IMG/VR virus record: IMGVR_UViG_3300042889_001503
Span: 124,001 to 188,000 of that record
Length of the DNA stretch: 64,000 nucleotides
Strand: one strand, 5' to 3'
The position numbers and the translations under genes were made by a program. Shown piece by piece: positions 25,888-64,000 of this stretch. Position 1 is the first letter of the stretch. Every line of letters starts with the position of its first letter. The notes beneath the pieces were generated by a model. It was given only the letters and a program-made list of their open reading frames with translations. It was not told the DNA's origin and made no database searches.

Positions 25888-26070
25888 ATGAAACTTATAG
25901 ACACAATATCAAATGTTGTTACTGAGGCTAAAAATGTCTACGAAACGGCTTGTGACAAAGGTGTTCCTGAGAAGGAACTTGATAGATTAGAAAAAAATTA
26001 CTACGAATCCTTAAAACTTCTAAGGATATATGAAAATTTAGGTAAGAGAGAAAATAAACCTATTGATTAA
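25888..26070 (+). CDS. Small protein with [LIV]-x-E leader (MKLIDTISNVVTEAK)
   Basis: ATG at 25888 in the 25873 ORF. It is the lone + strand gene inside the minus-strand block and has its own motif. Confidence 0.6.
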   Translation: MKLIDTISNVVTEAKNVYETACDKGVPEKELDRLEKNYYESLKLLRIYENLGKRENKPID

Positions 26071-26705
26071 TAAATTTTAGTAAGTGTAAAATTTCTTGAA
26101 AATATTTGATTTCCCGCATTAGTGGTATTCCATTGGACATTCACCGATAATGTGTTGATTATTGTGGTGTCAAATGTCGTATTATTAATCTCACTTAATG
26201 GATATCCTTCATAGGTAAGTCCAGAATCTTTAAGGTAGGAGAATAGTCCACCGGATGATATTGAAGCAACGGTGGTTCCCCCGATTTGTCTTATCGTGAA
26301 ATATAGTGTTAATAACCAAGGCTTTGAGGTTGAGGTATCCAAATCTATTACTCCTGTATCAATGAGTAATGTCCCACCAGTTGTTCTAACGTGAACGTGG
26401 ATTGTTGCGGTGTTAATGCAAGACAAAACGCCATCGAATGATGCTTGAAACGAATCACCAACTCTGAAACTATTTGCAGGAACAGACAAAGTCCCAACAC
26501 CCGGTCCTATTACACTAGTCTCGACAGTGGTTGCGGATACCGTAGCGCTATCACCTGTTTGGGCAAATAAACCATATGCCAACGGAAACGGTGTTAATGT
26601 TGATTGTTTTATTTTATATGTTGTTCCCGAAAGTTCAACAGCATATTCTGCATTTGAGGTTGTAGCGGTTAATTCGGGTAATCCTGATATTGGTAAATCT
26701 GGCAT
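26067..26705 (-). CDS. Putative tail fibre/spike-like protein
   Basis: N-terminal 'PISGLP...SGTTYKI' motif typical of fibre N-termini; beta-rich C-terminal domain. Confidence 0.5.
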   Translation of the reverse strand: MPDLPISGLPELTATTSNAEYAVELSGTTYKIKQSTLTPFPLAYGLFAQTGDSATVSATTVETSVIGPGVGTLSVPANSFRVGDSFQASFDGVLSCINTATIHVHVRTTGGTLLIDTGVIDLDTSTSKPWLLTLYFTIRQIGGTTVASISSGGLFSYLKDSGLTYEGYPLSEINNTTFDTTIINTLSVNVQWNTTNAGNQIFSRNFTLTKIY

Positions 26706-26716
26706 ATCTTTTTATT

Positions 26717-26724
26717 TATAAATA
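26717..26724 (-). promoter_or_regulatory. TATTTATA motif (within palindrome TATTTATAAATA)
   Basis: 11 nt upstream of the ATG at 26705. Confidence 0.5.
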
Positions 26725-26726
26725 GT

Positions 26727-27299
26727 TTATGTTATAATAATTTTTGACCCATTGGCTTGTAAAATGTAAAACCCGTTGGCTTGTTCTAAATAATATATTG
26801 GAGTCGGTGTAGGTGTTTGTGTGTGGGTTGGAGTTATAGTTGGTGTCGGTGTTGGAGTAAGAGTGTTTGTTGGGGTTTGTGTGTGGGTTGGAGTTATAGT
26901 TGGTGTCGGTGTTGGAGTAAGAGTGTTTGTTGGGGTTTGTGTGTGGGTTGGAGTTATAGTTGGTGTCGGTGTTGGAGTAAGAGTGTTTGTTGGAGTTATA
27001 GTTGGTGTCGGTGTTGGAGTAAGAGTGTTTGTTGGGGTTTGAGTCATTGTTGGGGTTGGCGTTGGGTATAAAGAGTTACAATTAATAATATTAAATCGTT
27101 CACACCCATCCGAGGTTATAATTTTAATACCGACAGCGGGTGCCATATCAAATGGAATTGGTAATACAATTTCTACAGATGCTGGTACAGGTGTGTTAAT
27201 TTGAACAATATATCCACAATTATTCCCATAGACATCACATACGTAAACATCGTATGGGTAAGTTAACCCTGTGATACTATTTAGGATTATTGATGTCAT
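26727..27299 (-). CDS. Small Cys domain + PT tandem repeat structural protein
   Basis: N-domain is paralogous to 30583-30804; PT repeat; C-terminal [16 protein letters not shown]. Confidence 0.6.
26815..27040. repeat. Perfect 60-bp tandem repeat (about 3 copies plus a 36-bp sub-unit copy) encoding [20 protein letters not shown]
   Basis: 26821-26880 is identical to 26881-26940, and 26941-26993 continues identically. Confidence 0.95.
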
Positions 27300-27302
27300 A
27301 AA

Positions 27303-29489
27303 TTAATATGTGTATAATGGGTTTGTAGGTAATTGGAGAACACCATTAATTACCGTTGCAACTGTATCGTATGTCAAACTATACACTCCATTAATAATTG
27401 GTCTTGCCAAAATTTGATATGATTCGACATTAAGAGGGTCTGTTAATTTTATGTCATAATAATACATGAACATTTGTCTGGCACCCCAACTAACATTTGT
27501 CCCTGCTGATGTATAATTATTACACGTTGATGCTGATAATGTGGGGATTGGTGTATAAGGTAATGTATTACCTGAAAACGGCATTGTTGTGTTTAACCAA
27601 TCACTATACATAAAATATCCATAAGCGGTTGATGCTGAAGCAACTACGGGTGCGTTTTGGTAATAGACGAATACACGCCCAAAAGGGTCTAAGTATCTAG
27701 AACCGGTATTTGAAGTAAATGCTGTAACATTTGTTGTTCCGGTCGAACTATTATTAATATCATTGATTGCACCATTGTGATATGATTGACAATTATCATC
27801 ACAAATATTATATGGTGGCATACCATTTGTTATTGTTGGCATTGTTATCGTTATAGTATAGTTTCCTGAGGTAAAACCGGTTGTTAATACACTAGAATAA
27901 TGAAATTGATATCTTAATATATTAGTTCCATCCCCACATACTTGACTACCACTTCTTTCCGGTATTGATAATTCATACCATCTATAATAAGTTGTAAGGG
28001 AAGGTGTTGATGGTGTTCCTGAATATGGTAAAATACTTAGAAATGATGAATAGTATGCGGAAAAATCACTTAAATTATTAAAACTCATTTGAACAAACCC
28101 TTGACCAAATGGACCAGTGTTAGATTTTTGAAATGATATTGTATTTGTATTTGCGGGTGATAAACAAGTAGGTGGCTCTATGTATTTTTGATACCCTCCC
28201 CCACAACTATTTGAGACCCACTTCAATGGACTCGTAGTATTTTGTAGTAGTTGTGTGGTATTGTCTGTTGATATATTATAATATTGTGTATTATTAACAC
28301 TATATAAACCTGATGCTTGATATCGTGTAATATCATTAGTTTCTATTGAATTTGTTGTACATCCAGATACGTTAAAAGAAATACTGATTGATGAACAAGA
28401 ACCTGTGGTTCCTGTGATAGATGATGCTTTTATTTTATATGGGGTGTTTAAATAATCGTATGCACATATGTTACAGTTAAAAGTATTTTTACACGTAAAA
28501 TAAAAATCCCAATTTGTTTGATTGTTATTTGGATTTGGGGTTACTTCTAATTTTATATAATCACCTGTATTTCGAGTTAATGAGGTTAATGACGTTACTT
28601 TTGAAAAATAAGTAGGTGTTTTACCTGATTTTGGGAGAGTTAATAAGTCAATATTGGTTTCTGTATTAATACCTACAACCCACTTTTCTAAAATAATTGG
28701 GTTATAACTATAGTGTGACCCATAATATGTTAATGTAAGAGTGTCAGGAACTGTAAAACCTGCAAATTTCCATGCAAAATAATTTGTGGTTGCGGCAGAA
28801 ATTTCAAAAGTTGATGACATTATTAATGGTTGTACTCCCGCAGATGCTCCTGAAAACTGAACTCTATGTGTATAATCCCCGGATTCGGTACCATTATCAC
28901 ATCTATACGCTTGAACCACAACGGTTGTGGAGTTAAAACATTCTAAGTTTGCTTGAATAAATCCTGTTCCACCTGTTTGTGAGTAATTTAACCCGTTTAA
29001 TTTTATTTTATCGATAATTGGTGTATAAGTCCCCGCGATTGTCATTGGTGAGGTTGCACCGGTTAATGGATGTGTATAATTGTATGGGATAAATTCTGTT
29101 CCATATCCTGATGTAAATACAGGTGTTGTAAAATCAGGACTTTTAAACCAATTTATTCTATATTGAGCAATACTTGGTTGACAAGACCCTGTTAAATTTC
29201 CTGCAACTATTCTACTAATTAAACTTGTTGAATACGAATCAAAAGATAAATCACACGTCGTACATAAGTCATTACAAGTAAGAGGAACATCACAACAATA
29301 AAAGTTTGCTGATTTTAACTTTATTGTTGATGTCCCATCAGGTATTCCTGTTAAAACTAACGGACAATTTGTTATTTGGTTTAATGTAACTGCGGTAATA
29401 AACACATCACTAAAAGTGTAAATTGATATTGGTTCCGTTAAAGTTGTTGTTCCTGTATATGATAAACAAGTCGATGCTGAAAATGACAT
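27303..29489 (-). CDS. Putative fibre/receptor-binding protein, paralogue of 22859-25114
   Basis: Colinear paralogy; T/S/N/Y/C-rich. Confidence 0.6.
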   Translation of the reverse strand: MSFSASTCLSYTGTTTLTEPISIYTFSDVFITAVTLNQITNCPLVLTGIPDGTSTIKLKSANFYCCDVPLTCNDLCTTCDLSFDSYSTSLISRIVAGNLTGSCQPSIAQYRINWFKSPDFTTPVFTSGYGTEFIPYNYTHPLTGATSPMTIAGTYTPIIDKIKLNGLNYSQTGGTGFIQANLECFNSTTVVVQAYRCDNGTESGDYTHRVQFSGASAGVQPLIMSSTFEISAATTNYFAWKFAGFTVPDTLTLTYYGSHYSYNPIILEKWVVGINTETNIDLLTLPKSGKTPTYFSKVTSLTSLTRNTGDYIKLEVTPNPNNNQTNWDFYFTCKNTFNCNICAYDYLNTPYKIKASSITGTTGSCSSISISFNVSGCTTNSIETNDITRYQASGLYSVNNTQYYNISTDNTTQLLQNTTSPLKWVSNSCGGGYQKYIEPPTCLSPANTNTISFQKSNTGPFGQGFVQMSFNNLSDFSAYYSSFLSILPYSGTPSTPSLTTYYRWYELSIPERSGSQVCGDGTNILRYQFHYSSVLTTGFTSGNYTITITMPTITNGMPPYNICDDNCQSYHNGAINDINNSSTGTTNVTAFTSNTGSRYLDPFGRVFVYYQNAPVVASASTAYGYFMYSDWLNTTMPFSGNTLPYTPIPTLSASTCNNYTSAGTNVSWGARQMFMYYYDIKLTDPLNVESYQILARPIINGVYSLTYDTVATVINGVLQLPTNPLYTY

Positions 29490-29519
29490 ATTATTTTATT
29501 TTATTTTATTTTATTACTA

Positions 29520-30581
29520 TTAACTAAGACACACAGTATTTGAAAATGAATACCCTGACATACCACTATCTAAACAAACAATTGGTAATGTTGATGTTGG
29601 AGTATTAGTTGGTGTTGGTGTGTGTGTTTGTGTTGGCGTTTGTGTTGGTGTCATTGTCATTGTTTGGGTAGGTGTCATTGTTGGAGTTCGTGTTGGTGTA
29701 GGTGTTGGCACAGTATCTGGTTGACAGTATATACAATCACCTTCTGTTGAAAGACCATACGAAACCGGGTTTGTAATTTGAATTATGGAATCGTTTCCGT
29801 GATTATAATCATAACCATAATATGAGACACATTTTAATTCATTCACACCATTGTAATATACAAGTGCTAAATAAACCGAATATAACTCAAATTGAGTTCC
29901 CGTTGGAACACCAGTTATTTCGTTAGCGTAATAATATTGTTTATTATCAAAACAATCTTGGAATTTTTGAGTGCCGGGACATATAATTTGTCCTTCTATT
30001 GTTGTAAAGATAGCCAATCCGGACGCGTCACAATTTCTAGCAATTAAGGATGAATAGAAAGGTAATCGAGCTTTTCTATTATTTACGTAATACATTGTGG
30101 GTGTTACGGTAGGTGTTGGTGTTGGAGTTGGTGTGTAGGTATATCCACTAGCGTCAATACCAATAATTGAACAGAAATTAGTTGGTGATGGTGTTATTGT
30201 CGGAGTTGGAGTAACACTAGCGGTAGGTGTGGGTGTTTGTGTCTGAATAAAATCACAATTAAACATTGCGGAAAAATCTAACACATCACAATTCTGTGTA
30301 GGTGTTGGGGTAGGTGTTAAACATATACCACTAAAAACATAAATACTTGATAAATCAGGACATAGACTACTACAAGGTGATTTACCTGTCAAGTAACAAG
30401 GTCCTCCTAAAGTATCTGATAAACACCATTGACTAGTTGTTCCGGTTGAGTAATAAATGGTCCAACCACTTGTTTGTCCTGACCAATAGGTGTCACCATT
30501 ATAGGTTCCTCCTGTAATGTAATTATCGTCGGCACCTACTAATCCGGTATTGCTTATACAGTATGTTGAATTACAAGGCAT
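29520..30581 (-). CDS. Cys-rich structural protein with several PT linkers
   Basis: MPCN start (shared with the 14897 ORF); multiple TPTPT tracts. Confidence 0.6.
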   Translation of the reverse strand: MPCNSTYCISNTGLVGADDNYITGGTYNGDTYWSGQTSGWTIYYSTGTTSQWCLSDTLGGPCYLTGKSPCSSLCPDLSSIYVFSGICLTPTPTPTQNCDVLDFSAMFNCDFIQTQTPTPTASVTPTPTITPSPTNFCSIIGIDASGYTYTPTPTPTPTVTPTMYYVNNRKARLPFYSSLIARNCDASGLAIFTTIEGQIICPGTQKFQDCFDNKQYYYANEITGVPTGTQFELYSVYLALVYYNGVNELKCVSYYGYDYNHGNDSIIQITNPVSYGLSTEGDCIYCQPDTVPTPTPTRTPTMTPTQTMTMTPTQTPTQTHTPTPTNTPTSTLPIVCLDSGMSGYSFSNTVCLS

Positions 30582-39674: not shown

Positions 39675-40475
39675 ATGAAAGAAAAGAGCTCAGGTATTCC
39701 AATTAATCAAGAAGAAATAAACCTGTATTTAAAGGACATCCGTAAAATTAAGGTAATGACACCGGAAAGAGAGAAAGAATTATCTAAGATGATTACATCC
39801 GGTACTTTATCCCCAAGGGAGATTGATGAGGTAAACCAAGAACTATTGGAAGGTAACTTACGTTTTGTTATTACCGTGGCAAAACAATATCAAAATCAAG
39901 GATTAGACTTTCCTGACTTAATTGCTGAGGGTAATTTAGGATTAATGAAAGCCATCCAAAATTTTGATTGGTCTAAGAACCTTAGATTTATATCTTACGC
40001 GGTATGGTGGGTTAAACAATCAATCCTTCAGTCATTAAATGATAATGCGAGAACCATCCGACTACCTGTTAATGTGGTTCAGGATTTACATAGAGCCAAG
40101 AAAGCGATTGAATCCAACGGTGGTAAGTTGGAGGACAAGTTTCAAAATCTACCATCAATGGTTTGGTTAGATATGAGTATTAATGAAGATGGGGACACTC
40201 TTGTTGATATTGTTAGAAACGACCAAGCAGATATGCCTGACGAAGTTTTTGATACCAAGGATGAATTAAAAAGACAATTACATTCACTGTTGAATGTTTT
40301 GGATGATAGAGAAAAAGTTATTGTGGGAGACTATTATGGGCTTACCGGGACACCAAGAACTCTTGAAGACATTGGTGGTGACTTTAACCTAACAAAAGAA
40401 CGTGTTAGACAAATTAAAGAGAAAGCCTTACGGAAATTAAGGAATGATAGTTCAATATTATACGATTATATGTAA
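39675..40475 (+). CDS. RNA polymerase sigma70 factor, RpoD-like, Bacteroidota short type lacking region 1.1
   Basis: YLKDI (1.2), NLRFVITVAKQY, DLIAEGNLGL, RFISYAVWWVKQSI, RTIRLPVN, TLEDIG...LTKERVRQIKEKALRKLR. Confidence 0.92.
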   Translation: MKEKSSGIPINQEEINLYLKDIRKIKVMTPEREKELSKMITSGTLSPREIDEVNQELLEGNLRFVITVAKQYQNQGLDFPDLIAEGNLGLMKAIQNFDWSKNLRFISYAVWWVKQSILQSLNDNARTIRLPVNVVQDLHRAKKAIESNGGKLEDKFQNLPSMVWLDMSINEDGDTLVDIVRNDQADMPDEVFDTKDELKRQLHSLLNVLDDREKVIVGDYYGLTGTPRTLEDIGGDFNLTKERVRQIKEKALRKLRNDSSILYDYM

Positions 40476-41595: not shown

Positions 41596-42192
41596 ATGAT
41601 AGACATAATTAAATATGGTGAATTCAAACCTGTTGGAAAACAAAAAAAGAAACACCAAATAATACTTACACACACATCAAGAAACATCAACGACTATCTT
41701 CAGTCGTTGAAGTTTCGTTTTAACGGGGGTTTTAAAAGAATTCCTAACTACATTATTACCCGGGAGGGTAAAATTATACAATTATTGGGAAACACCGAAC
41801 ACTCGGAATACTTCAAAGACCCCAATATAAATCGTAATTCAATTATCATATCATTAGAAAATTTAGGGTGGTTACAAAAAGAACCACTAACTGACCATTA
41901 CATTAACTGGATTGGGGATATTTATAAGGGTAGCGTGTTTGAAAAAAAGTGGAGAGATTACTTTTTTTGGCAACCATATACTGAAACTCAAGTTGATAAT
42001 CTTGGGTTATTATGTAAGGAATTGTTTGAAAGTGTAAAGATTAAATCACAAATTGTTGAACATAACACAAAAATAAGCGGGATTGAAAAATATTGTGGGA
42101 TTGTAACTAAAAGTAATTTTGGTGTTGATTATACCGATGTTAGTCCGGCATTTAAATTTAATGAACTTTTAAAAAAAATAGAAAATGAATAA
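41596..42192 (+). CDS. N-acetylmuramoyl-L-alanine amidase (Amidase_2)-like protein, possibly degenerate
   Basis: IILTHT, NYIITREGKIIQL, NRNSIIISLEN, YTETQ..L, DVSPAF. Confidence 0.7.
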   Translation: MIDIIKYGEFKPVGKQKKKHQIILTHTSRNINDYLQSLKFRFNGGFKRIPNYIITREGKIIQLLGNTEHSEYFKDPNINRNSIIISLENLGWLQKEPLTDHYINWIGDIYKGSVFEKKWRDYFFWQPYTETQVDNLGLLCKELFESVKIKSQIVEHNTKISGIEKYCGIVTKSNFGVDYTDVSPAFKFNELLKKIENE

Positions 42193-42802
42193 TTCACACG
42201 ACGAAATTAAACAATTATTAAATGTTTCTCGAAGATTATTGGGGGATAATAATGTAAATGAAGATATCCGTAGACAATATGGGTTATTGACAGAACAGGG
42301 TGTTGATTTGACAGATAATAATGTTACATCAAAAGTTAATGTGACTAAATCTGTTGAGGACAAAATTGATTATGATACCGCTGATACTGAAGAAGAACTT
42401 GAATCTGAGGATGATAAAAAGCAAGCGTATAGAATTTCCGGTGGATTATTGGTTTTACACGGAAAAGAACAAACAGATTTAGAGTTAACGACAGATGAGA
42501 AGATAGCGTTTCAAGAAACAATGGATGAGTTTGTTTCTAACGTTTCTGATATGGTTGATTTTAATAAATTAAACGTATATTCCAATAATGTTGAATGGTC
42601 CGGGAAACTTATTGAATTTGATATTGAATTTTTCTTTTCGATAGGTGAAGAAAATGGTGTTTACATCAATGGAGAAATGTTAAACGCTGATAATGAATTC
42701 ATCGCGTTAATTACTAAATTAAAAACTTATTACGAGAAATTCAAATCAAAATGGGCGGCTGTATTATCATCAAGAAAGAAAACAATTAAAACTGAAGAAT
42801 AA
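42185..42802 (+). CDS. Hypothetical acidic protein (possible internal head protein)
   Basis: N-terminal 'IRRQYGLLTEQ' leader-like motif. Confidence 0.6.
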   Translation: MNNSHDEIKQLLNVSRRLLGDNNVNEDIRRQYGLLTEQGVDLTDNNVTSKVNVTKSVEDKIDYDTADTEEELESEDDKKQAYRISGGLLVLHGKEQTDLELTTDEKIAFQETMDEFVSNVSDMVDFNKLNVYSNNVEWSGKLIEFDIEFFFSIGEENGVYINGEMLNADNEFIALITKLKTYYEKFKSKWAAVLSSRKKTIKTEE

Positions 42803-43766: not shown

Positions 43767-44525
43767 ATGAGACTAAAAGAAAGTATTGGGACTGATTTGA
43801 AAAGCGCTATGTCAACTGAAATGGGAAAATTGTCTACAATTACTAGTGGTGGTATTGATGCGGCGGTTGCAGCTAACGAATTTAAAAATGAAATCCCGGA
43901 AAATAATAATAAAATAATTAAAAAACCAATGAAAAAGGTTGATATCGGCAAATTAGTGGGTAAGAGTAAACTTAAAACACCAACAGGTAAATTAACAATG
44001 GGACTACCAATAATGGGTGAAGATAGTGAAACATCTGAATCTACCGGTTCAGGTTCCGCAGGAGGGTTTGAGGCTCCATTATTCTCTGAAACTAAACAAG
44101 AGATGCAAGAAAAATGTTGGACAGGTTTTGAACAAAAGGGTATGAAAAAGAAAGGTACACGAATGGTCCCTAATTGTGTAAGAGAAGGTGACGAGGGTGA
44201 TATTAAAAAAGTTGAGGCTACTGAATCAACAGGTTCAGGTTCTTCCGGTTCTTATGAAACTACCGCCGCTTGGGCTAAATCTCAAAGTAAAAAAGATTGG
44301 AGAGGAAAGTCTAAGACACAAATACCCGGAGGAAAGTTTGTTCAAGTTAAAAAGAAATGTCAAAAATTTCCATATTGTAATCAAGGAGATATTAAAGCTC
44401 TAAAAATATTTGAAAATGAAAAGGTTAAGAAAGCTATTCAAAATATTAGTGAGAGACATAATATAAGTGAGAATGTTATTAAAACAATTATCGCTTATGA
44501 GTATGAAAATACCTTTTCAAAGTAA
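43767..44525 (+). CDS. Probable internal head/core-like protein
   Basis: MRLKES start; duplicated ESTGSGS(A/S)G; 'EKCWTGF..KKKGTRMVPNCV' module recalled from T4-like phage low-complexity proteins. Confidence 0.5.
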   Translation: MRLKESIGTDLKSAMSTEMGKLSTITSGGIDAAVAANEFKNEIPENNNKIIKKPMKKVDIGKLVGKSKLKTPTGKLTMGLPIMGEDSETSESTGSGSAGGFEAPLFSETKQEMQEKCWTGFEQKGMKKKGTRMVPNCVREGDEGDIKKVEATESTGSGSSGSYETTAAWAKSQSKKDWRGKSKTQIPGGKFVQVKKKCQKFPYCNQGDIKALKIFENEKVKKAIQNISERHNISENVIKTIIAYEYENTFSK

Positions 44526-44564: not shown

Positions 44565-45881
44565 ATGAAAAAATTAAATACAACTTATTTAGATAATTTA
44601 GTGTCTAAAATTTTAAAAGAAACTTTAGAAGAAAAGGCGGACACTCTTGTTTCAAAGATTAAAGGTGACGTTTGCGAATGTGGGGGTCAAATGTATGAAG
44701 GTGAATGTAATGAATGTGGTGGTATGTATGAGGATATGAGTGAAGGAATTTACGATGTTGATAACACATTAGATGATGAGTTTGATTATGTTGGAGAAAG
44801 TGAAGACTTTGTTGGTGATGAAGAAAACACTGACGAAGATAGAGAAAAAACTTGTAGATACCATATTGAAAATTTTGGTAAAGAAGACCCTGTTACTAAA
44901 GAAATGTGTCAAGGTATTAATATTACCGAGGCATTAAAAGGTCGTCAAAGAAAATTGGATAAAAACAAAAACAATAAGATTGATGCTGAAGACTTTGAAA
45001 TGTTAAGAAATAAATCAAAAAATAGTAAAGCCATTAAAAGAATTAACAAAATTTCTACAACACACGGAATGGAAGAACAAGAAACGGAAGAAGGTAATGC
45101 TTTCTCAGGAGCGTTATCTAACGCTAAAAAAAGTGGTAAAGATTCTTTTGAAGTAGATGGTAAAAAATATCCGGTTAAAGAATCGTATAGATTGACTGAA
45201 AATGAAATGGTTGGGTTAATTGAGAAAATTGTGTTAGAACAAAAAAATAAAGAAGTTAAAGACCCTGCGGAAAAAAATAACATTAAAGGTTTTGGAGGTT
45301 CTCCAAGAGGATTAGAGGTTTATAAAAAAGCTCACAATGGTTCCGGAAAGGAAAATGATGATAACATTAAAGCGGTTACCAAAAAAATGAAAGATTATCT
45401 TAAAGATGGTTCTAAAGGTGATTATGAAATGAACCCTAAAATGTTTCCTAAAGGAAATGGTGAAATAGAAAAGATGAAGAAAAAGGCTTATACTATGTCA
45501 GATGCGGGTCAAGAATTTATTGATGATTTTATGAGTCCTGGTATGGAAAATTTAGACTATGACCAAATAGAACCGAATGAAGAACAAATAACTAATAACA
45601 TTGAAGGTTCTTCTAAAACAGGTAATAACTCTGAATGGGGTAATGCTGTTGAAACAGATGTTAACAAAAAGATTAATGCCAAACGTAAAGCTAATAAATT
45701 TGCTAAAGTAAGAAATATGGCTTATCAAAAATCTGCTCAACCTATTAAAGATGCGACAGGTGAGGATAGTGGTAAAGGTATTAACCTTAAATTGGAATCT
45801 ACTGAAAAGAAAACAAAACAAATCAACGAAGAGTTTGACAGAATGAAATCGTTAATTAGTTACGACCGAAAAACACAATAA
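44565..45881 (+). CDS. Probable scaffold/internal head protein (E/K-rich)
   Basis: Many [LIV]-x-E sites (ILKE, ITEA, VKES, LTEN, VLEQ, INEE); CECGG..ECNECG; EF-hand-like DKNKNNKIDAED. Confidence 0.55.
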   Translation: MKKLNTTYLDNLVSKILKETLEEKADTLVSKIKGDVCECGGQMYEGECNECGGMYEDMSEGIYDVDNTLDDEFDYVGESEDFVGDEENTDEDREKTCRYHIENFGKEDPVTKEMCQGINITEALKGRQRKLDKNKNNKIDAEDFEMLRNKSKNSKAIKRINKISTTHGMEEQETEEGNAFSGALSNAKKSGKDSFEVDGKKYPVKESYRLTENEMVGLIEKIVLEQKNKEVKDPAEKNNIKGFGGSPRGLEVYKKAHNGSGKENDDNIKAVTKKMKDYLKDGSKGDYEMNPKMFPKGNGEIEKMKKKAYTMSDAGQEFIDDFMSPGMENLDYDQIEPNEEQITNNIEGSSKTGNNSEWGNAVETDVNKKINAKRKANKFAKVRNMAYQKSAQPIKDATGEDSGKGINLKLESTEKKTKQINEEFDRMKSLISYDRKTQ

Positions 45882-50484: not shown

Positions 50485-51882
50485 ATGAAGATTATCCAAG
50501 TACTTTCAAATTTAATAACTGAAGACGCTCGTTTTCAGGTATTTTATAATAAATATATACTACCTAGTGGTGATAGAAAAAAAGGATTACTTCCTTTTGA
50601 AATTGTTAAGCAAATAGTTTTTGCTGACCCAACAACAAGAGTTCCGGTTAACTATGACAAAAATGGTGCGTCCGTTGAAGATATGTTAAGTAATCAAATT
50701 AAGGTTGGGAAATATAGTCAATGGATGTTAAATATGTTTATTAAACCACATTTAACTAATGACAATAATGATGTTATAGAAGTTAATACTGACGAATATA
50801 AATCAAAGGCAAATCAATATAGAAAACTTTTTTTAGAAGATTTACATTACTTTACTGAATTACTAACAAAATTTGAAAGATTCAAAGGTAGTTTAGTAGA
50901 TGCGTCTAAGAAAGATATTAATAATGTTAAATCTATTAACGAATTATCTCAATTACAAGTTGAGTATGGTGATACAACAGTTGATTTGGCTGTGTATCGT
51001 GGTAAAAAAGTTAAAAACGAAAAAGGTGCTGACGTTAAAACAAACTTTAATTTTCCCGGTGCGGAAATATTAAAGGTTGGTTCAGAATATACCTTGATTA
51101 GAATTTCTGATAAAGGTGACTTAGGTTCTAAGGCGGCTTCTTATTTTGGAGGTTACGAAGGAGGATTAGCAAGAGGTGAGTCTAATTGGTGTACGGCAGC
51201 AACAGGTTCTGACCACTCACATAGATATAGACAAAAAGGTCCATTATATATTATTATGGCTAATGACGATAAAGGTAAAGTAGGTGAGGTAACAGGATTA
51301 CCTACAGAAAGATATCAACTTCACTTTCCAGCACCGAGTCAATTTAAATCTCGTGACCAATATTCTGCTGAGGGTAATGTCCCAATTGTTGAATTTTTAA
51401 ATGGTAAATGGAGTGAATTTAAAGAAATATTGAAACCTGAATTTGCTAAAGGGTTTGTTACACCAAATAGTGAAAACGTTAACATTAGATATCCATCTGA
51501 TGAAACAGGTAGATTTGTTGCGTTATATGGGTTTGAAGAATTATTTGAGGCGTTACCGGACACGATTAAAAAATTAAATATTGTTAACACTTCAAATGAA
51601 AACATTAGTGTAGCACTTCCTAAGTCAATTGTTAGGTTTAAATCGTTAGTGGCGGTGATGTTTCAGAATATGATTAGTTCAATTCCTGATAACATCTGTG
51701 AGTTGAAGAACTTGACGTTATTGGCTTTCCCTGATAATAAAGAATTAAAATCAGTTCCGGATTGTATACTGTCATTAAAAAACTTTACATTTTTAAATGT
51801 AAACGGATGTCCTAATGTTCAAGTACCAAAAGAATTGGAAAAATATAATGAAGGTAATGGTTATTACCATATGGAAGAATAG
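50485..51882 (+). CDS. LRR-containing protein, paralogue 1
   Basis: LITED leader; WCTA motif; C-terminal LP..I..L..L LRRs. Confidence 0.75.
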   Translation: MKIIQVLSNLITEDARFQVFYNKYILPSGDRKKGLLPFEIVKQIVFADPTTRVPVNYDKNGASVEDMLSNQIKVGKYSQWMLNMFIKPHLTNDNNDVIEVNTDEYKSKANQYRKLFLEDLHYFTELLTKFERFKGSLVDASKKDINNVKSINELSQLQVEYGDTTVDLAVYRGKKVKNEKGADVKTNFNFPGAEILKVGSEYTLIRISDKGDLGSKAASYFGGYEGGLARGESNWCTAATGSDHSHRYRQKGPLYIIMANDDKGKVGEVTGLPTERYQLHFPAPSQFKSRDQYSAEGNVPIVEFLNGKWSEFKEILKPEFAKGFVTPNSENVNIRYPSDETGRFVALYGFEELFEALPDTIKKLNIVNTSNENISVALPKSIVRFKSLVAVMFQNMISSIPDNICELKNLTLLAFPDNKELKSVPDCILSLKNFTFLNVNGCPNVQVPKELEKYNEGNGYYHMEE

Positions 51883-51917: not shown

Positions 51918-53309
51918 ATGAAGATTACAAAAGTATTATCGAACTTAGTTACTGAAGACGCTCGTTTTCAAATTTTATACAAAAAATATGTGTTACCTAG
52001 TGGTGATAGAAAAAAAGGTTTACTACCATTTGAGGTTGTTAAACAAATTGTTTTCGCTGACCCAACAACGAGAGTTCCTGAGAACTACGATAAGGAAGGT
52101 GCGTCTATTGAGGATATGACAAGTGACAAAATTAAAGTTGGTAAATATACCCAATGGTTGTTGAATCTATTTGTTAAACCATACATAACTAGAGAAGGTT
52201 CTAATGAACCAATTGAGGTTGGGACTGATGAGTATAAATCAAAGGCGACTGAATACAGACGACTTTTCTTAGAAGATTTATCTCAATTCACTGAATTATT
52301 AGTGAAATATGATAGATTTAAAGGTAGTTTAGAGGATGCCGCTAAAAAAGACATTAACAATGTTAAATCACTTAATGATTTATCTCACTTGAAAGTTAAA
52401 GTGGGTGATGAAACGGTTGATTTAAATATGTATCGTGGTAAAAAAATTAAGAAAGAAGAAGGTGTTGCTGCTAACACAAACTTTAATATTCCCGGAGCTG
52501 AAATTTTAAAAGTTGGTTCTGAATACACACTAATTAAAATTGCTGACAAAGGTGCTTTAGGTTCTAAAGCGGCATCTTATTTCGGTGGTTATAGTGGAGG
52601 ACTTGATAGAGGTGAAACTAACTGGTGTACGGCAGCAGAAAATTCAAGTTATTCAAACACTTACAGACAACAAGGTCCATTATATATCTTTATTGCTAAT
52701 GATGATAAAGGTAAGGTTGGTCAAGTTACGGGGTTACCATCAGAAAGATATCAATTCCACTTCCCATCTAACCAATTTAAATTTGCTAACCAACACGGTG
52801 GTAACATTCCGGTTGTTGAGTATTTGAATGGTAAATGGTCTGAGTTTAAAGAAATATTCAAACCTGAGTTTGCGGCTGGATTTGTTAAACCAAATTCTGA
52901 TAATGTTGAAATTAAATACCCGGACTCTGCTACAGGTAAGTTCGTGGCTTTATACGGATTTGATGAATTATTTACATCATTACCTATAACAATTAAAAGA
53001 TTGAACATTATTAACACTTCAACAGAAAGTGTTACAATTGATGTTCCTGAGTCAATCAGTAGATTCCAATCATTAACAGCAATATTGTTTGAGAATATGA
53101 TTAGTAAACTTCCAAACTCAATCTGTGAATTAAAGAACTTGGTGTTTATCGCTGTTCCGGGTAACAAAGAATTGAAAACAATTCCGGAATGTATTATGAA
53201 TTTACCAAACCTTACATTTGTGAATGTAAGTAGATGTCCTAATGTTCAAGTGCCAAAAGCGTTAGAACAATACAATACGGGTGAAGGTTTCTACCATATG
53301 GAAGAATAA
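51918..53309 (+). CDS. LRR-containing protein, paralogue 2
   Basis: End-to-end similar to 50485-51882. Confidence 0.75.
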   Translation: MKITKVLSNLVTEDARFQILYKKYVLPSGDRKKGLLPFEVVKQIVFADPTTRVPENYDKEGASIEDMTSDKIKVGKYTQWLLNLFVKPYITREGSNEPIEVGTDEYKSKATEYRRLFLEDLSQFTELLVKYDRFKGSLEDAAKKDINNVKSLNDLSHLKVKVGDETVDLNMYRGKKIKKEEGVAANTNFNIPGAEILKVGSEYTLIKIADKGALGSKAASYFGGYSGGLDRGETNWCTAAENSSYSNTYRQQGPLYIFIANDDKGKVGQVTGLPSERYQFHFPSNQFKFANQHGGNIPVVEYLNGKWSEFKEIFKPEFAAGFVKPNSDNVEIKYPDSATGKFVALYGFDELFTSLPITIKRLNIINTSTESVTIDVPESISRFQSLTAILFENMISKLPNSICELKNLVFIAVPGNKELKTIPECIMNLPNLTFVNVSRCPNVQVPKALEQYNTGEGFYHMEE

Positions 53310-56389: not shown

Positions 56390-56396
56390 TATGGGA

Positions 56397-56404
56397 TATT
56401 TATT
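56397..56404 (+). promoter_or_regulatory. TATTTATT motif
   Basis: 3 nt upstream of the ATG at 56408. Confidence 0.55.
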
Positions 56405-56407
56405 ATT

Positions 56408-56839
56408 ATGAAAATAGTAATTAAAGAATCTCAGTATAACTTTTTGGTTGAACAAACTACACCATCAACAACACCGGTTCCATTAAGTAGAGAAGAACAA
56501 ATTAAGTTAAATAAAGAAAAACTTGAACTTAAAAAGAAAGCTGCTGAGGAATTAAAACTTAAAACCATTCAAAAAAAGGATTCAATTGCAAAGGCTTGGG
56601 ATGAAAAAAGAGCTCCTGAATTAAAGAAAGCTGAAGAATTACATAAAAAATATCTTGATGCTTGGTTAGCTGCTAATCCGGGTAAAACGGAAAAAGATTA
56701 TAGTAAGTATTTGGAGAAACAAAAAAAATTACCTGATTCACCATCCTATGAAACTCAAGACCCATCATTCAAATCAACAAAATGTGGTGTTTCAAAAGCG
56801 GCGGCAAAACAATCTAAAAGTGATTGGTCTAAAAAATAA
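56408..56839 (+). CDS. Lys-rich protein with IKESQ..LVEQ leader
   Basis: MKIVIKESQYNFLVEQ; self-contained between terminators. Confidence 0.65.
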   Translation: MKIVIKESQYNFLVEQTTPSTTPVPLSREEQIKLNKEKLELKKKAAEELKLKTIQKKDSIAKAWDEKRAPELKKAEELHKKYLDAWLAANPGKTEKDYSKYLEKQKKLPDSPSYETQDPSFKSTKCGVSKAAAKQSKSDWSKK

Positions 56840-57940: not shown

Positions 57941-58022
57941 GATAATATATGTATTAAAGTTTATATATCCATAAATATCAATAATAATCATAATAAGTAA
58001 ATAAATTTTGTATCTTCGTGGA

Positions 58023-58030
58023 TATTTATT
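58023..58030 (+). promoter_or_regulatory. TATTTATT motif
   Basis: 3 nt upstream of the ATG at 58034. Confidence 0.55.
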
Positions 58031-58033
58031 ACT

Positions 58034-59401
58034 ATGGGTAGAAAATTAAGACTTACAGAATCCGAATTATATAAAGTAATCAAAAAAATAGTTGAGCAAA
58101 CTGAGGACGAATATTATAGAATATCTCCTGAGGATTACTTGGATATGATGCAATATGCCAGTTATAATGGTAATGTGTTTAGAAAAATGAAAAAATATGG
58201 TGGAAAACCATTATATATTACAGGTGATTTAGATTTAAGCGGTTTACCGGTTAAAGACATTGGACCAATAGGTTATGTTGACGGTAGATTTGATATTAGC
58301 AGAACTAAAGTATCCGATATTGGTAATTTAAGAAGTAAGTCACATATTTGGGATTCGGGGTCTCCTCGAGAAAGAATTAGAGAAAAACAAGAACTTTTGG
58401 GTAAACAAGCTGAGATGGACTCCAAACGAGAAGATGATGAATGGAATTTTCAAAATCACGATGAAGAGGGATTAAAGGCTATGGCTTTATTAGAATATCT
58501 TGAGGGTCAAGGTAAAGTTAAAGTATTGGATAATGATGAGAAAGAAGAGTTAAAAGAATTGACTCAACAATTGGAAGAACTTAATGCCGATTATGATGAT
58601 GAAGATAGAGACGGTGACCCGGATGAGAATGTGGAAATATTAAATAAAATTGAAGAAGTTCAAGAAAGAATTGATGATTTAACTGGTGACGTTGGTGACA
58701 TCTATGATATGTATCCAACAAATTATACTCATTATGGTTTGACTCAATTTGAAGTTTTGGTGGATGGTTTTAAAGGTGAAGAATATACTGTTGGAACTGA
58801 GGAAGAAATGGATAGAGCGGCTTTAGAGTATTCTAAAAATTATATTGATGATGTTGGAGCTGATGGGTTTAGTAAAAGTTTTATTGAGGATTATTTGGAT
58901 GAAGATGCAATTGTTGACTTTGCAAGAGAAGATTATGAATATCAAGTAAGAGATAGTCCGGAAAGTTATTTTAATGATGATGATTTTGAATTGACTTCAG
59001 AACAAGAAGAAAGAATAGAACAGATTGAATCTCAAATTGAGGATTTGGAACAACAAAAACTTGAATTAGATTCAGATGATGAAAATTATTATGACTACGA
59101 AGAGGATTTAGATAATCAGATTGAATCTCTTCAAGAAGAGTTAGACAATATTGAGGTTGATACTGACCCAACTGAGGATATGATTGATAATAAAGTTGAA
59201 GAATTAGTTAGGTGGGTTAAACGAGACCCTATGCAATATCTTAATGATTACGGTATGGACGTTAAAGAATATATTGATGGAGATGCTTTAGCTCAAGGGT
59301 TAGTTGATTCTGATGGGTGGGGTATTATGAACAGTTATGACGGTACTTATGACAGTATTGATATAGGTGGTGAGTCTTATTACGTAATGAGAGTTAACTA
59401 A
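58034..59401 (+). CDS. Highly acidic protein with LTESEL leader, short LRR-like segment and acidic coiled coils
   Basis: MGRKLRLTESELYKVIKKIVEQ; GDLDLSG..VDGRFDISRT; D/E-rich C-terminal two-thirds. Confidence 0.7.
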   Translation: MGRKLRLTESELYKVIKKIVEQTEDEYYRISPEDYLDMMQYASYNGNVFRKMKKYGGKPLYITGDLDLSGLPVKDIGPIGYVDGRFDISRTKVSDIGNLRSKSHIWDSGSPRERIREKQELLGKQAEMDSKREDDEWNFQNHDEEGLKAMALLEYLEGQGKVKVLDNDEKEELKELTQQLEELNADYDDEDRDGDPDENVEILNKIEEVQERIDDLTGDVGDIYDMYPTNYTHYGLTQFEVLVDGFKGEEYTVGTEEEMDRAALEYSKNYIDDVGADGFSKSFIEDYLDEDAIVDFAREDYEYQVRDSPESYFNDDDFELTSEQEERIEQIESQIEDLEQQKLELDSDDENYYDYEEDLDNQIESLQEELDNIEVDTDPTEDMIDNKVEELVRWVKRDPMQYLNDYGMDVKEYIDGDALAQGLVDSDGWGIMNSYDGTYDSIDIGGESYYVMRVN

Positions 59402-61672: not shown

Positions 61673-62533
61673 ATGATAGAAACAGGAAAGATAATTAATG
61701 GAGATTGTATTGAGGTAATGAAAACATTTCCTGAAGGTTCAATTGATTTACTAGTAACATCACCACCATATAATGTAAACATTTCGTATGATGTTCATAA
61801 GGATGATTTACCAATGGAGGAATATTACGAGTGGTCAAAGGATTGGTTGAGAGAGGCGTTCCGAGTATTAAAAGATGATGGTCGAATTGCTGTGAATGTC
61901 CCAAATGAATTGAATGTCCAAGAAAGAGGTGGGAGAATATTATTCGTTGCCGAGTTTTGGATGTTAATGAAAGAAGTTGGGTTTAAATTTAGTGGGTTAG
62001 TCGACCTTACGGAAGATAGTCCACATAGAGTTCGACAAACGGCTTGGGGTTCTTGGATGAGTGCGTCAGCACCTTATATCTATAATCCTAAAGAGTGTAT
62101 CATATTGGCTTATAAGAAAAGTAGTAAAAAATTAACTAAAGGAGTTTCACAATGGATGGGAATATCAACTGAGGTTACTACTGAAGATGGTAAGGTTAAA
62201 AACAAAATGATTTATCAGGACGAAGATAAAAAAGAATTTATGAATTTGGTGTTTGGTAGATGGGAATATTTTGCGGATACTAGGTCATTAACTAAAGCCA
62301 CATTCTCAATGGACATTCCATCAAAGGCGATTAAGATATTGTCTTATAAAAATGATATTGTTCTTGACCCTTTTATGGGAAGTGGGACTTCAGCTTTTGC
62401 GGCTGAGTTATTAGATAGACGATGGATTGGAATTGAGTTATCTCCGGATTATACAGAAATTGCAAGGAAAAGAGTTCAATCATTAATTGATGAACGAAAA
62501 CAAACAAAATTAGAATTAAAAGAAGAGGTGTAA
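61673..62533 (+). CDS. Site-specific DNA methyltransferase, N4/N6 family beta class (SPPY suggests m4C)
   Basis: GDC, VTSPPYN, VLDPFMGSGT, IGIEL. Confidence 0.9.
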   Translation: MIETGKIINGDCIEVMKTFPEGSIDLLVTSPPYNVNISYDVHKDDLPMEEYYEWSKDWLREAFRVLKDDGRIAVNVPNELNVQERGGRILFVAEFWMLMKEVGFKFSGLVDLTEDSPHRVRQTAWGSWMSASAPYIYNPKECIILAYKKSSKKLTKGVSQWMGISTEVTTEDGKVKNKMIYQDEDKKEFMNLVFGRWEYFADTRSLTKATFSMDIPSKAIKILSYKNDIVLDPFMGSGTSAFAAELLDRRWIGIELSPDYTEIARKRVQSLIDERKQTKLELKEEV

Positions 62534-62549
62534 TAACCTCTTTTTTATT
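62523..62549 (+). terminator. Intrinsic terminator
   Basis: AAGAGGT-gtaata-ACCTCTT-TTTT. Confidence 0.75.
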
Positions 62550-62556
62550 TTCTGTA

Positions 62557-62564
62557 TATTTATA
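62557..62564 (+). promoter_or_regulatory. TATTTATA motif
   Basis: 15 nt upstream of the ATG at 62580. Confidence 0.6.
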
Positions 62565-62579
62565 ACTAAAACAATTACT

Positions 62580-62936
62580 ATGGCAAAAAGATTTATAATT
62601 TCGGAAGATGAAAAAAGAGATATCCGTTCAAGATATGGTTTAGTTAATGAACAAAATGATGGTTTTGAACTTAAAAAAGGGATACAATGTTTCCTTAACA
62701 AAAAAGGTTATAAAGATGATGCGAATCAACCATTAAAAGTTGACGGATTACTAGCGGGTAAAACAGCGGAAGCTTTAAGTAAATATCAATCTAAGATTGG
62801 TGTTACCGCAGATGGTGTTTGGGGTCCTGAAACACAAAATAAAATGTCTGATAAAGACGTTCAACTTTTTAAACAATGTGTATCCGATGAAGGTAGTTTC
62901 ATTGATAAAGGTTTACATATGTTTGGTTTAGATTAA
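62580..62936 (+). CDS. Peptidoglycan-binding domain protein with ISEDEK..LVNEQ leader
   Basis: IQCFLN..GY..L.VDG..G.KT..AL..YQ..IG..ADGVWGPET (PG_binding_1). Confidence 0.8.
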   Translation: MAKRFIISEDEKRDIRSRYGLVNEQNDGFELKKGIQCFLNKKGYKDDANQPLKVDGLLAGKTAEALSKYQSKIGVTADGVWGPETQNKMSDKDVQLFKQCVSDEGSFIDKGLHMFGLD

Positions 62937-64000
62937 TGAAAAAACTTATAAAAGAAAGTGGATTAAGAGACATTAACGCTCTTGCTAAAAGATACCCTAA
63001 AGCTGAAATATATTTTCACCAAGATTTAGATGGTGTAACTACGGCTATTGCGATGAAAGAATATCTTAAGAATAATGGTATTGATGTAATAGATTCTCAT
63101 ATCATCCAATATGGTGATAAAGAGTTCGCTGTAAAGAAGAATGACGCTAAAGGGGACGTGATGCCTGTTTTAGTTGATTTTGCTCACGGAAAACCAATGT
63201 TTGTGATTCACACAGACCACCACGATAGACAAGCCGGAGCTGAAGACACTAAATCAACATCATTTAGAAGTTCCCGTTCAAATGTTGAGACAATCTCTCA
63301 GGTAGTTTCTCCAAAAGAATTATTCCCATCCTCAGACATATTACTTATTTCTACTGTAGATTCTGCAAACTATGCGGTTAACGATATTTCAGTGGACCAA
63401 GTAATCTCTTACTTATTCAGATTAGATAAAGAGAAATCGTTAGAAAAGAATAAAATGTTAATGGGGTTAGTTGTTAACAAACTATTATTAGCGTTTAAAA
63501 ACAAACCAGGGTTCTTAGAGACATTGGTTATGGAATGTTCTCCATCGTTATTAAATATACTTCACACCATTAAACGAATAATGGTTGAGAAAGGATACGC
63601 GAAACCGGACCAACTTGAAAAGAATAAAGAAGACTATGTCACATCAATGCAAACTAACCCTAATGTTAAAGTATTAGGTAATGTTATTGTTCAATATGGT
63701 GGGGGTTCAATGTTTAAGCCAGGTTCTTACGATAGATACACACCATTCAAAAATAATCCTGAGGCTGACTTTATTGTTATTGCTTGGCCGTTAGGGTTAG
63801 TTCAAGCGTCTTGTAACCCATTCAAAGGAGAACGTCAATTAAAAGGTGTGAATTTAGGTGAGATTGCCCAAGAGGTATTATCAAAATGGGAGGACCAATT
63901 AAAACAAAGAGAGATAACCCTTTCAACAATTAAATGGATTTCAGAATCATCAAAAGATTTTAATTCGGAATCAACAGGATTTACCTTTAAAGATTTTGTT
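62936..64000 (+). CDS. DHH-family phosphoesterase (3' truncated; not in ORF track)
   Basis: MKKLIKES...FHQDLDG...LVDFAH...HTDHHD...SRSN...STVDSA; open to the window end. Confidence 0.8.
   Translation, partial: MKKLIKESGLRDINALAKRYPKAEIYFHQDLDGVTTAIAMKEYLKNNGIDVIDSHIIQYGDKEFAVKKNDAKGDVMPVLVDFAHGKPMFVIHTDHHDRQAGAEDTKSTSFRSSRSNVETISQVVSPKELFPSSDILLISTVDSANYAVNDISVDQVISYLFRLDKEKSLEKNKMLMGLVVNKLLLAFKNKPGFLETLVMECSPSLLNILHTIKRIMVEKGYAKPDQLEKNKEDYVTSMQTNPNVKVLGNVIVQYGGGSMFKPGSYDRYTPFKNNPEADFIVIAWPLGLVQASCNPFKGERQLKGVNLGEIAQEVLSKWEDQLKQREITLSTIKWISESSKDFNSESTGFTFKDFV

What the first reader, a model, noticed from the sequence alone, without database searches (positions are those of the whole stretch)
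25888..64000. Shared N-terminal [LIV]-x-E leader on unrelated proteins: candidate capsid-targeting and maturation system for packaged cargo
Seen: unrelated cargo domains begin with similar amphipathic K/I/L leaders containing [LIV]-x-E. Examples: MKLIDTISNVVTEA (25888), ..VSKILKETLEE (44565), MKIIQVLSNLITED (50485), MKITKVLSNLVTED (51918), MKIVIKESQYNFLVEQ (56408), MGRKLRLTESELYKVIKKIVEQ (58034), MAKRFIISEDEK..YGLVNEQ (62580), MKKLIKES (62936), MRLKES (43767) and ..YGLLTEQ (42185). Most sit directly behind, or in an operon behind, a TATTTAT motif, and primase, nuclease, sigma and Trx lack the leader. Known: T4 gp21 protease cleaves after [LI]-x-E, and T4 internal proteins carry a short N-terminal capsid-targeting sequence. 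Inference: a modular promoter-plus-leader cassette loads diverse effectors (LRR proteins, DHH phosphoesterase, PG-binding and acidic proteins) into the head for injection.
Basis: partly seen in the sequence, partly recalled or inferred. Interest (0 to 1): 0.8.

Follow-up and report, generated by a model that had tools for sequence, protein, structure and literature searches.

The report
Shared capsid-targeting-like leaders, jumbo phage
A large T4-like phage of freshwater Bacteroidota puts a few related short N-terminal peptides ending in hydrophobic-x-Glu on dozens of unrelated proteins; these are most likely address tags that load cargo into the capsid and are then cut off by its T4-type head protease, but no protein data exist to show it.

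Summary
All ten N-termini are real, but the criterion as written ([LIV]-x-E) is too weak. It occurs in 48% of N-termini here against 33% of interior windows, and also in primase, nuclease and thioredoxin.

A sharper signal lies behind it. The window belongs to a 270-330 kb T4-like "bS21" jumbo phage of freshwater Bacteroidota. In 216 kb of this genome, about 30-40 otherwise unrelated proteins begin with one of three related peptides:
- **MK-phi-phi-phi-[TK]-E:** 17 genes here, none in 1,573 genes of other AT-rich phages, and once in 56,607 interior residues.
- **An 11-13-residue amphipathic helix** ending phi-phi-x-E.
- **A longer helix** ending phi-phi-x-E-Q.

The same genome encodes a T4 gp21-family prohead protease with the catalytic His and Ser. 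Its gp23-type capsid protein reads LINE|A where T4 gp23 is cut (LTE|A). All 110 orthologues of one cargo protein keep [LIVM]-x-E at the leader's end, in two registers.

T4-style capsid-targeting propeptides are the best reading (about 0.55), unproven without virion proteomics. TATTTAT is the phage's general late promoter, not a cassette part specific to leaders. Novelty: a new variant of the T-even internal-protein system.

The parts
25877..25883 (+). TATTTAT late-promoter-like motif, 4 nt before the ATG at 25888 (leaderless-type spacing)
25888..26070 (+). 60-aa ORF with a 13-residue leader MKLIDTISNVVTE|A (aa 1-13 = 25888-25926)
   Evidence: 13-mer pattern M-x-phi-x3-phi-x2-phi-phi-x-E
42185..42802 (+). 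205-aa acidic protein with a long leader ending ..NEDIRRQYGLLTE|Q (E37). The leader end is kept in relatives, also as GIINE|Q and LIIE|Q
43767..44525 (+). 252-aa protein starting MRLKES. Weak candidate: the N-terminus is not conserved in all orthologues
44565..45881 (+). 438-aa protein behind TATTTAT (44544-44550). N-terminal ..VSKILKE|T (E19), plus a conserved internal leader-like module KESYRLTENEMVGLIEKIVLE|Q (aa 207-225, about 45183-45239)
50485..51882 (+). 465-aa protein with a C-terminal LRR domain. Leader MKIIQVLSNLITE|D (50485-50523); TATTTAT at 50463-50469. AF2 residues 1-11 have pLDDT below 50
51918..53309 (+). 463-aa paralogue (71% identical) with leader MKITKVLSNLVTE|D; TATTTAT at 51893-51899
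56408..56839 (+). 143-aa protein with composite leader MKIVIKE|SQYNFLVE|Q (56408-56452), followed directly by a Pro/Thr-rich linker. TATTTAT at 56397-56403, 4 nt before the ATG
58034..59401 (+). 455-aa acidic protein of unknown fold with leader MGRKLRLTE|SELYKVIKKIVE|Q (58034-58096). TATTTAT at 58023-58029. AF2 pLDDT is below 50 exactly at E21-T23
62580..62936 (+). 118-aa PG_binding_1 protein with leader MAKRFIISE|DEKRDIRSRYGLVNE|Q (62580-62651). TATTTAT at 62557-62563. The leader is the best conserved part of the family
62936..64000 (+). DHH-family protein (468 aa in full, cut by the window end) starting MKKLIKES. Doubtful leader: the helix continues into DHH motif I
18506..19105 (-). Leader-like start, then a RuvC-like LGLDVSTKTIGW stretch; no Pfam hit
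1325..1331 (+). TATTTAT before the 1884-aa baseplate/fibre-module protein (1346-7000). Shows the motif also serves leaderless structural genes
21537..21550 (-). TATTTAT (minus strand) just upstream of the 807-aa structural gene 19109-21532. Similar sites precede 25784, 26705 and 30825
39675..40475 (+). Phage sigma-70 family factor (regions 1.2, 2 and 4). Possible reader of the phage promoters; not tested

Best explanation
The window comes from a T4-like jumbo phage (bS21 phage group, freshwater Bacteroidota) that builds its head the T4 way. A portal-nucleated core made of an acidic scaffold and a gp21-family serine protease is enclosed by a gp23-type shell.

Dozens of otherwise unrelated proteins carry a short N-terminal peptide in one of three related forms:
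- a 7-residue MK-phi-phi-phi-[TK]-E;
- an 11-13-residue amphipathic helix with hydrophobic residues at positions 3, 7, 10 and 11 and Glu at 13;
- a 21-37-residue composite ending phi-phi-x-E-Q.

Most likely mechanism:
1. The peptide docks the protein onto the assembling core, as a capsid-targeting sequence.
2. The prohead protease then cuts after the Glu of the hydrophobic-x-Glu site and frees the mature cargo inside the head.
3. The cargo is delivered with the DNA at the next infection.

Shown: the head module, the protease family and its catalytic residues, the capsid-protein site, and the leader's N-terminal restriction, peptide-level conservation, modularity and clade specificity.

Inferred: docking, cleavage, packaging and injection.
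For: (1) Identity of the phage.
- Window = contig positions 124001-188000 of a 272-kb contig.
- A bS21 gene, T4-type portal, Peptidase_S77, DUF4494 and Gp23 lie in the order published for bS21 phages.
- The gp25-sigma-DnaJ-Trx order matches Ga0209500_10000006.

(2) Protease. It is 35% identical to T4 gp21. ELNHP and GISSRG align with the two residues mutated in PDB 5JBL.

(3) Capsid protein. T4 gp23 GSFLTE|AEIGG aligns with ASFLINE|ATGEG, and LINE|AT is invariant in 53 orthologues. T4 gp21 cuts after L/I-x-E, and T4 propeptides are 7-65 residues long (PMC9026906).

(4) The leader is strictly N-terminal and specific to this phage.

(5) About 40 leader proteins share nothing beyond the leader, except three pairs. 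T-even internal proteins likewise share only the leader (PMC12373910).

(6) The constraint acts on the peptide. Ser is coded by both AGY and TCN, and Ile, Glu and Lys codons vary.

(7) The 455-aa family keeps [LIVM]-x-E in 110/110 sequences in two registers (IVE|Q or I-[KLIV]-E|T), against 31% of shuffles.

(8) The leader is a discrete module.
- It is the best conserved segment, followed by variable or Pro/Thr-rich linkers.
- AF2 gives pLDDT below 50 at E21-T23 of the 455-aa protein and at residues 1-11 of the LRR protein.

(9) Different-looking leaders align column for column in front of the same mature protein (MNLRHDIKRILREE, MKLIRTIKSIVNEE). They are therefore one class.

(10) Timing and position.
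- Many leader genes lie behind the promoter-like motif that precedes portal, protease, scaffold, sheath and baseplate genes.
- Two lie near the capsid gene.
- 86% lie in co-directional runs behind such a motif, against 57% of other genes.

(11) No tail or baseplate protein has the leader.
Against: - No virion proteome, N-terminal sequencing or expression timing exists. The RNA runs gave only fragments.
- Hydrophobic-x-Glu is a low-information site, common in any helix.
- Direct association of leader and late promoter is not significant genome-wide (P = 0.07-0.3).
- About 12-15% of genes would be head cargo, far more than in T4. Many are about 100-aa proteins whose MK-phi-phi-phi-TE start could be the first strand of a small fold.
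- One leader-like module is internal (44565 protein).
- The DHH example looks like an ordinary domain N-terminus.
- The leaders do not resemble the T4 targeting sequence beyond general architecture. The T4 sequence was recalled from memory, not tested.
- Gene starts come from a simple ORF caller.
Confidence: 0.55

Rival explanations
1. The leader is a shared docking or oligomerisation helix for some other phage or host partner, such as a hub protein, the membrane or a chaperone (the phage encodes a DnaJ). It would be unrelated to the capsid and not cleaved.
For: The leader has an amphipathic helix pattern. An internal copy in the 44565 protein is conserved at variable positions. There are many small leader proteins in operons without a late promoter of their own. 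DnaJ lies at 48277-49197.
Against: This does not explain why the motif is confined to the extreme N-terminus (core seen once in 56,607 interior residues). It does not explain why the terminal Glu with a hydrophobic residue two positions before is kept through register shifts, or why that matches the capsid protein's maturation site.
Confidence: 0.15
2. The leader proteins form one fast-evolving paralogous superfamily. Repeated duplication has left only the N-terminus recognisable, so the shared start is inherited rather than a transferable signal.
For: Leader genes occur in tandem arrays of about 100-aa genes (asm 198105-200575 and 214281-216453). Weak residual similarity remains in two pairs.
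Against: The leader also sits on clearly unrelated architectures: LRR, PG_binding_1, a 455-aa coiled-coil protein and a Pro/Thr-rich 143-aa protein. Selective retention of only the first 7-25 residues would itself demand a function. This rival is compatible with the main explanation.
Confidence: 0.12
3. The N-terminal peptide tunes expression or stability: translation initiation on leaderless or short-leader mRNAs in a host without Shine-Dalgarno use, possibly with the phage bS21, or an N-terminal degradation tag.
For: Nineteen promoter-like motifs lie only 4-6 nt before the ATG, so the mRNAs may be leaderless. The phage carries bS21, proposed to favour late phage transcripts (PMC9723584). MK starts are A-rich.
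Against: Synonymous codons vary freely, and Ser uses both codon families, so the constraint is on the peptide rather than the RNA. AT-rich control phages lack the motif (0/1,573). The conserved element extends to residue 13-37 and ends in a fixed Glu. Most leader genes are internal to operons.
Confidence: 0.1
4. Chance and composition: K/I/L/E-rich N-termini of an AT-rich genome give [LIV]-x-E by accident.
Against: It fails for the refined motifs.
Confidence: 0.03

Closest known systems
T-even phage internal proteins (Ip1-3 and at least 10 others) with the capsid-targeting sequence, processed by gp21
   Same: Short N-terminal peptide shared by otherwise unrelated, non-essential, variable proteins. 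It ends in hydrophobic-x-Glu. A gp21-family protease and a gp22/gp23-type core and shell are in the same genome. Genes cluster in variable loci (PMC9026906, PMC3012670, PMC12373910).
   Different: The leader consensus differs, with three length classes. The repertoire is about 30-40 candidates in 216 kb against 3-10 in T-even phages. Cargo includes LRR and peptidoglycan-binding proteins. The host phylum is Bacteroidota. Nothing is shown experimentally.
T4 Alt, gp24 and gp23 propeptides (7, 10 and 65 residues)
   Same: The 7-residue MK-phi-phi-phi-[TK]-E start parallels the 7-residue Alt propeptide. The capsid-protein site aligns with the gp23 site.
   Different: The Alt sequence was not compared here. 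The capsid site has one extra residue (LINE against LTE).
phiKZ / 201phi2-1 / SPN3US head and inner-body protein propeptides
   Same: Jumbo phages with a diverged gp21-like protease. Many head proteins are cut after Glu, some losing long N-terminal regions. The internal site of the 44565 protein would fit that style.
   Different: Those proteases prefer a small residue at P3 (S/A/G-x-E or A-x-E; from my own knowledge of that literature). Here P3 is hydrophobic, as in T4. There is no sign of the phiKZ-type head module.
Encapsulin cargo-loading peptides and P22-type scaffold-mediated loading
   Same: A short terminal peptide addresses unrelated cargo to the inside of an HK97-fold shell.
   Different: Those peptides are usually C-terminal, are not cleaved, and have unrelated sequences.

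Membership tests
T4-type capsid-targeting / internal-protein system | gp21-family (Peptidase_S77) prohead protease encoded by the same phage, with catalytic His and Ser | tested here: met
   Pfam 85.3 bits against a cut-off of 27. 35% identity to T4 gp21. ELNHP and GISSRG align with the two positions that are Ala in PDB 5JBL.
T4-type capsid-targeting / internal-protein system | T4-type core and shell: gp20 portal, acidic scaffold, and gp23 capsid protein with an N-terminal propeptide ending in L/I-x-E | tested here: met
   Portal_T4 3e-79 and Gp23 1e-74. A 503-aa acidic protein lies between protease and capsid gene. LINE|A aligns to the T4 LTE|A site and is invariant in 53 orthologues. Actual cleavage is not testable here.
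T4-type capsid-targeting / internal-protein system | Short N-terminal peptide (7-19 residues) ending in L/I-x-E, shared by proteins that are otherwise unrelated | tested here: met
T4-type capsid-targeting / internal-protein system | Sequence similarity of the leader to the T4 targeting sequence itself | not tested
   The T4 Ip sequences were not fetched. From memory only the general architecture agrees (MK start, amphipathic helix, hydrophobic-x-Glu end).
T4-type capsid-targeting / internal-protein system | Expression when heads are assembled | tested here: inconclusive
   Many leader genes lie behind the motif that precedes the head, tail and baseplate genes. The genome-wide association is weak, and the RNA data are uninformative.
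T4-type capsid-targeting / internal-protein system | Presence in virions with the leader removed; ejection into the host | not testable with these tools
   The phage is uncultured and no proteome is available.
bS21 phages of freshwater Bacteroidota (Chen et al. 2022) | bS21 gene on the opposite strand inside the TerL-portal-protease-capsid block; 293-331 kb; GC 31-34% | tested here: met
   Ribosomal_S21 hit of 30.4 bits on the minus strand between portal and protease. GC about 32%. Contigs of 272-318 kb. Gene order matches.
phiKZ-type propeptide processing | Cleavage motif with a small residue at P3 (S/A/G-x-E) | tested here: not met
   P3 at the leader ends and at the capsid site is I, L, V or M.

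The most novel reading that the evidence does not exclude
Roughly one gene in seven of a 300-kb phage is addressed to the capsid by a sequence tag. The phage would then inject a large, fast-changing arsenal along with its DNA. That arsenal would include operons of about 100-aa proteins whose content differs between close relatives, plus LRR, peptidoglycan-binding and other proteins. The tag would allow injected, probably anti-defence, proteins to be predicted from sequence alone across uncultured T4-like phages of Bacteroidota.
Probability: 0.35. Interest if true: 0.8.

Novelty: new variant of a known kind. Interest (0 to 1): 0.62.

Why it matters
If the leaders are capsid-targeting propeptides, this extends the T-even internal-protein principle to a distant, abundant, uncultured group of jumbo phages of Bacteroidota, and on a much larger scale.
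- It gives a simple sequence rule for listing their packaged and injected proteins.
- It marks the variable leader-gene operons as places to look for new counter-defence functions.
- It offers a candidate tag for loading foreign proteins into such capsids.
- It corrects annotation: database proteins that start IFI[DVS]M are translations of the promoter.

Tried and rejected
- **No close relatives in GenBank.** Megablast of 20 kb against GenBank phages gave no match. The DnaB protein search found only relatives of 29% identity or less.
- **Structural proteins unannotatable.** PHROGs and Pfam on the window's large structural proteins gave almost nothing.
- **Single-family leader model.** A leader HMM built from one family recovered the other leaders only weakly. 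The leaders are a loose class, not copies.
- **Walking right of the window** found only small genes of unknown function. The head module lies about 90 kb to the left. It was reached through.
- **RNA runs** gave only fragmentary contigs of related strains, with no transcript starts or timing.
- **Fold searches.** The LRR protein matches only through its LRR part. The 455-aa protein matches nothing known.
- **RNA-level motif:** rejected.
- **AT-rich composition:** rejected.
- **"Promoter plus leader cassette":** rejected as a specific unit.
- **Not run.** The big-database profile search with a leader profile was left out, because a 13-25-position profile cannot reach significance against 1.8 billion proteins.


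Full report
**What the window is**

GC is about 32%. There is no near match in GenBank phages.

The 455-aa protein at 58034 has hundreds of close homologues on metagenomic contigs of up to 464 kb. It is 100% identical on IMG/VR contig 3300042889_001503 (272,437 bp). The locus ranges place the window at contig positions 124001-188000.

Window 1-30.8 kb is a baseplate and fibre module. A gp25 gene lies just upstream, and SprB repeats are present. The rest holds primase, SbcCD-like genes, a sigma-70 family factor, an Amidase_2, DnaJ, thioredoxin, glutaredoxin, two methyltransferases and many unknowns.

**Finding the head module**

I walked along the contig and tiled 216,452 nt, identical in every overlap. 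About 90 kb to the left of the window lies a T4-type head module:
- portal (Portal_T4, 3e-79);
- a ribosomal protein bS21 gene on the opposite strand;
- a Peptidase_S77 prohead protease (85 bits);
- DUF4494;
- a 503-aa highly acidic scaffold-like protein;
- a Gp23-type major capsid protein (1e-74).

This is the arrangement published for the bS21 phages of freshwater Bacteroidota. Those are 293-331 kb with GC 31-34% (PMC9723584). The gene order gp25, sigma, DnaJ, thioredoxin also matches one of them.

**Checking the observation**

All ten N-termini are as quoted. The stated motif is weak:
- [LIV]-x-E is in 48% of N-termini in the region, 33% of interior windows and about 35% of shuffled N-termini.
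- Primase, nuclease and thioredoxin also have it.

Sharper features are real. In relatives that are 45-75% identical, the LRR proteins' LITED becomes LITEQ, LIVEQ or LILEQ. This joins them to FLVEQ, GLVNEQ, GLLTEQ and KIVEQ. In 31 related loci, 54 of 68 phi-phi-x-E-Q hits lie within the first 45 residues.

Over the 262 genes of the tiled genome:
- M[KR]-phi-phi-phi-[TK]-E starts 17 genes. None of 1,573 genes in 68 AT-rich (27-34% GC) control phage loci start this way (P = 3e-15). The core occurs once in 56,607 interior residues.
- A 13-residue pattern (M-x-phi-x3-phi-x2-phi-phi-x-E) starts 7 genes, against 3 in the controls.
- phi-phi-x-E followed by Q, D, A, E, G or N is in 14% of N-termini, against 5% of interior windows (P = 3e-8).
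- An unbiased tripeptide count puts ITE, REE, KKI and IIK at the top.

Outside the leader, about 40 such proteins show no pairwise similarity except three pairs. Ser after the Glu is coded by both AGY and TCN, and other codons vary, so the constraint is on the peptide.

**One leader class**

Orthologues of a 241-aa and a 137-aa protein carry MNLRHDIKRILREE, MKLIRTIKSIVNEE or MKLIGTIKSILVEE in front of 80-88% identical mature parts. The leaders align column for column, with invariant M1, L3, I7, I10, E13 and E14.

Composite leaders add a second helix:
- MKIVIKE|SQYNFLVE|Q
- ..LRLTE|SELYKVIKKIVE|Q
- ..FIISE|DEKRDIRSRYGLVNE|Q

The leader is the best conserved part of its families and is followed by variable or Pro/Thr-rich sequence. 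AlphaFold models give low confidence for residues 1-11 of the LRR protein and exactly at E21-T23 of the 455-aa protein.

**Link to head maturation**

- T4 gp21 cuts after L/I-x-E. It removes propeptides of 7 residues (Alt) to 65 residues (gp23). The 10-19-residue propeptides of the internal proteins target them to the core. T-even internal proteins share only that leader (PMC9026906, PMC3012670, PMC12373910).
- The protease here is 35% identical to gp21. It keeps the His and Ser that are replaced in the 5JBL crystal construct.
- The T4 gp23 site GSFLTE|AEIGG aligns with ASFLINE|ATGEG in this capsid protein. LINE|AT is invariant in 53 orthologues while the residues after it vary.
- In the 455-aa family, all 110 sequences (18 different hexamers) keep [LIVM]-x-E at the leader's end. 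When IVE-Q is lost, I-[KLIV]-E appears one position later. Shuffles keep the motif in 31% of cases.
- No tail or baseplate protein has the leader.

**The TATTTAT motif**

It lies within 45 nt upstream of 59 genes, or 65 after correcting six starts, against about 4 expected. The consensus is aTATTTATa, with two spacings to the ATG: 4-6 nt and 12-20 nt.

It precedes portal, protease, scaffold, sheath, gp13, gp25 and baseplate genes, so it is the late-type promoter of the phage. In the window it precedes 7 of the 10 cited genes.

Genome-wide, leaders are not significantly enriched directly behind it (OR 1.8, P = 0.07). However, 86% of leader genes lie in co-directional runs behind one, against 57% of other genes. 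One example is a terminator hairpin followed by TATTTAT and then seven small leader genes. Their number and kinds differ between relatives. The promoter is thus shared with all late genes and is not part of a leader-specific cassette.

**Cargo**

Only three cargo domains are recognisable: LRR, PG_binding_1 and DHH. The DHH protein's start is probably an ordinary domain N-terminus. The 455-aa protein gives a confident model (pLDDT 86.5) with no known relative. The other leader proteins had no Pfam hit on record.

**Verdict**

Cleavage, packaging and injection remain inferred.

Limits:
- Genes were called with a simple longest-ORF rule.
- Motif patterns were refined after seeing the data. They were then checked against interior positions, shuffles, orthologues and control phages.
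- About 55-115 kb of the genome was not seen.

Noticed in passing
window 25873-25887; also 56393-56407 and 58019-58033: ORF callers and database entries extend these proteins by IFI[DVS]M.. (for example LIFIDM.., MIFISM..). That extension is the translation of the promoter ATATTTAT lying 4 nt before the true ATG. The 4-6-nt spacing class (19 genes) suggests leaderless mRNAs.
   Followed up: partly
window 45183-45239 (aa 207-225 of the 44565 protein): An internal, conserved copy of the leader-like module (KESYRLTENEM..IEKIVLE|Q) occurs at variable positions (aa 130-313) in all relatives. It may be an internal maturation site that removes a long Cys-rich acidic N-terminal half.
   Followed up: partly
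L317-L321, 3262-3570: Some relatives have an extra 102-aa leader gene (MKKIVKLNESELINFIKKFIAEE..) between the amidase gene and the homologue of the 42185 gene. This is gain or loss of a leader-tagged gene.
   Followed up: no
L329, L328, L330, L331, L332 (contig region about 217-220 kb, outside the window): An operon of small genes that all start with leader variants. The number and kinds of genes differ between relatives 63-80% identical in the anchor gene.
   Followed up: partly
L229 7915-8109 (minus strand): A phage-encoded ribosomal protein bS21 lies between the portal and protease genes. This ties the window's phage to the published bS21 phage group.
   Followed up: yes
window 18506-19105 (minus strand): A 199-aa protein with a RuvC-like LGLDVSTKTIGWALFD stretch after a leader-like MKKTLKES start. 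It has no Pfam hit and sits among structural genes.
   Followed up: no
window 26727-30581 (minus strand); 14897-18469; 25122-25784: Fibre-like proteins with long TPTPTxTPT linker repeats and SprB repeats, consistent with a Bacteroidota host surface.
   Followed up: no
window 41596-42802: An Amidase_2 gene overlaps the start of the leader-bearing 205-aa gene, and the PG_binding_1 protein at 62580 also has a leader. The phage may carry cell-wall-directed proteins in the particle.
   Followed up: no
contig 39-59 kb (L049, L129): A cluster of sugar-nucleotide and glycosyltransferase genes (DegT aminotransferase, epimerases, GDP-mannose dehydratase, several GT2) lies between the head and tail modules.
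   Followed up: no
L035 5455-6822: In one metagenomic contig the 455-aa gene is called in two pieces (346 + 73 aa). I did not examine this further.
   Followed up: no
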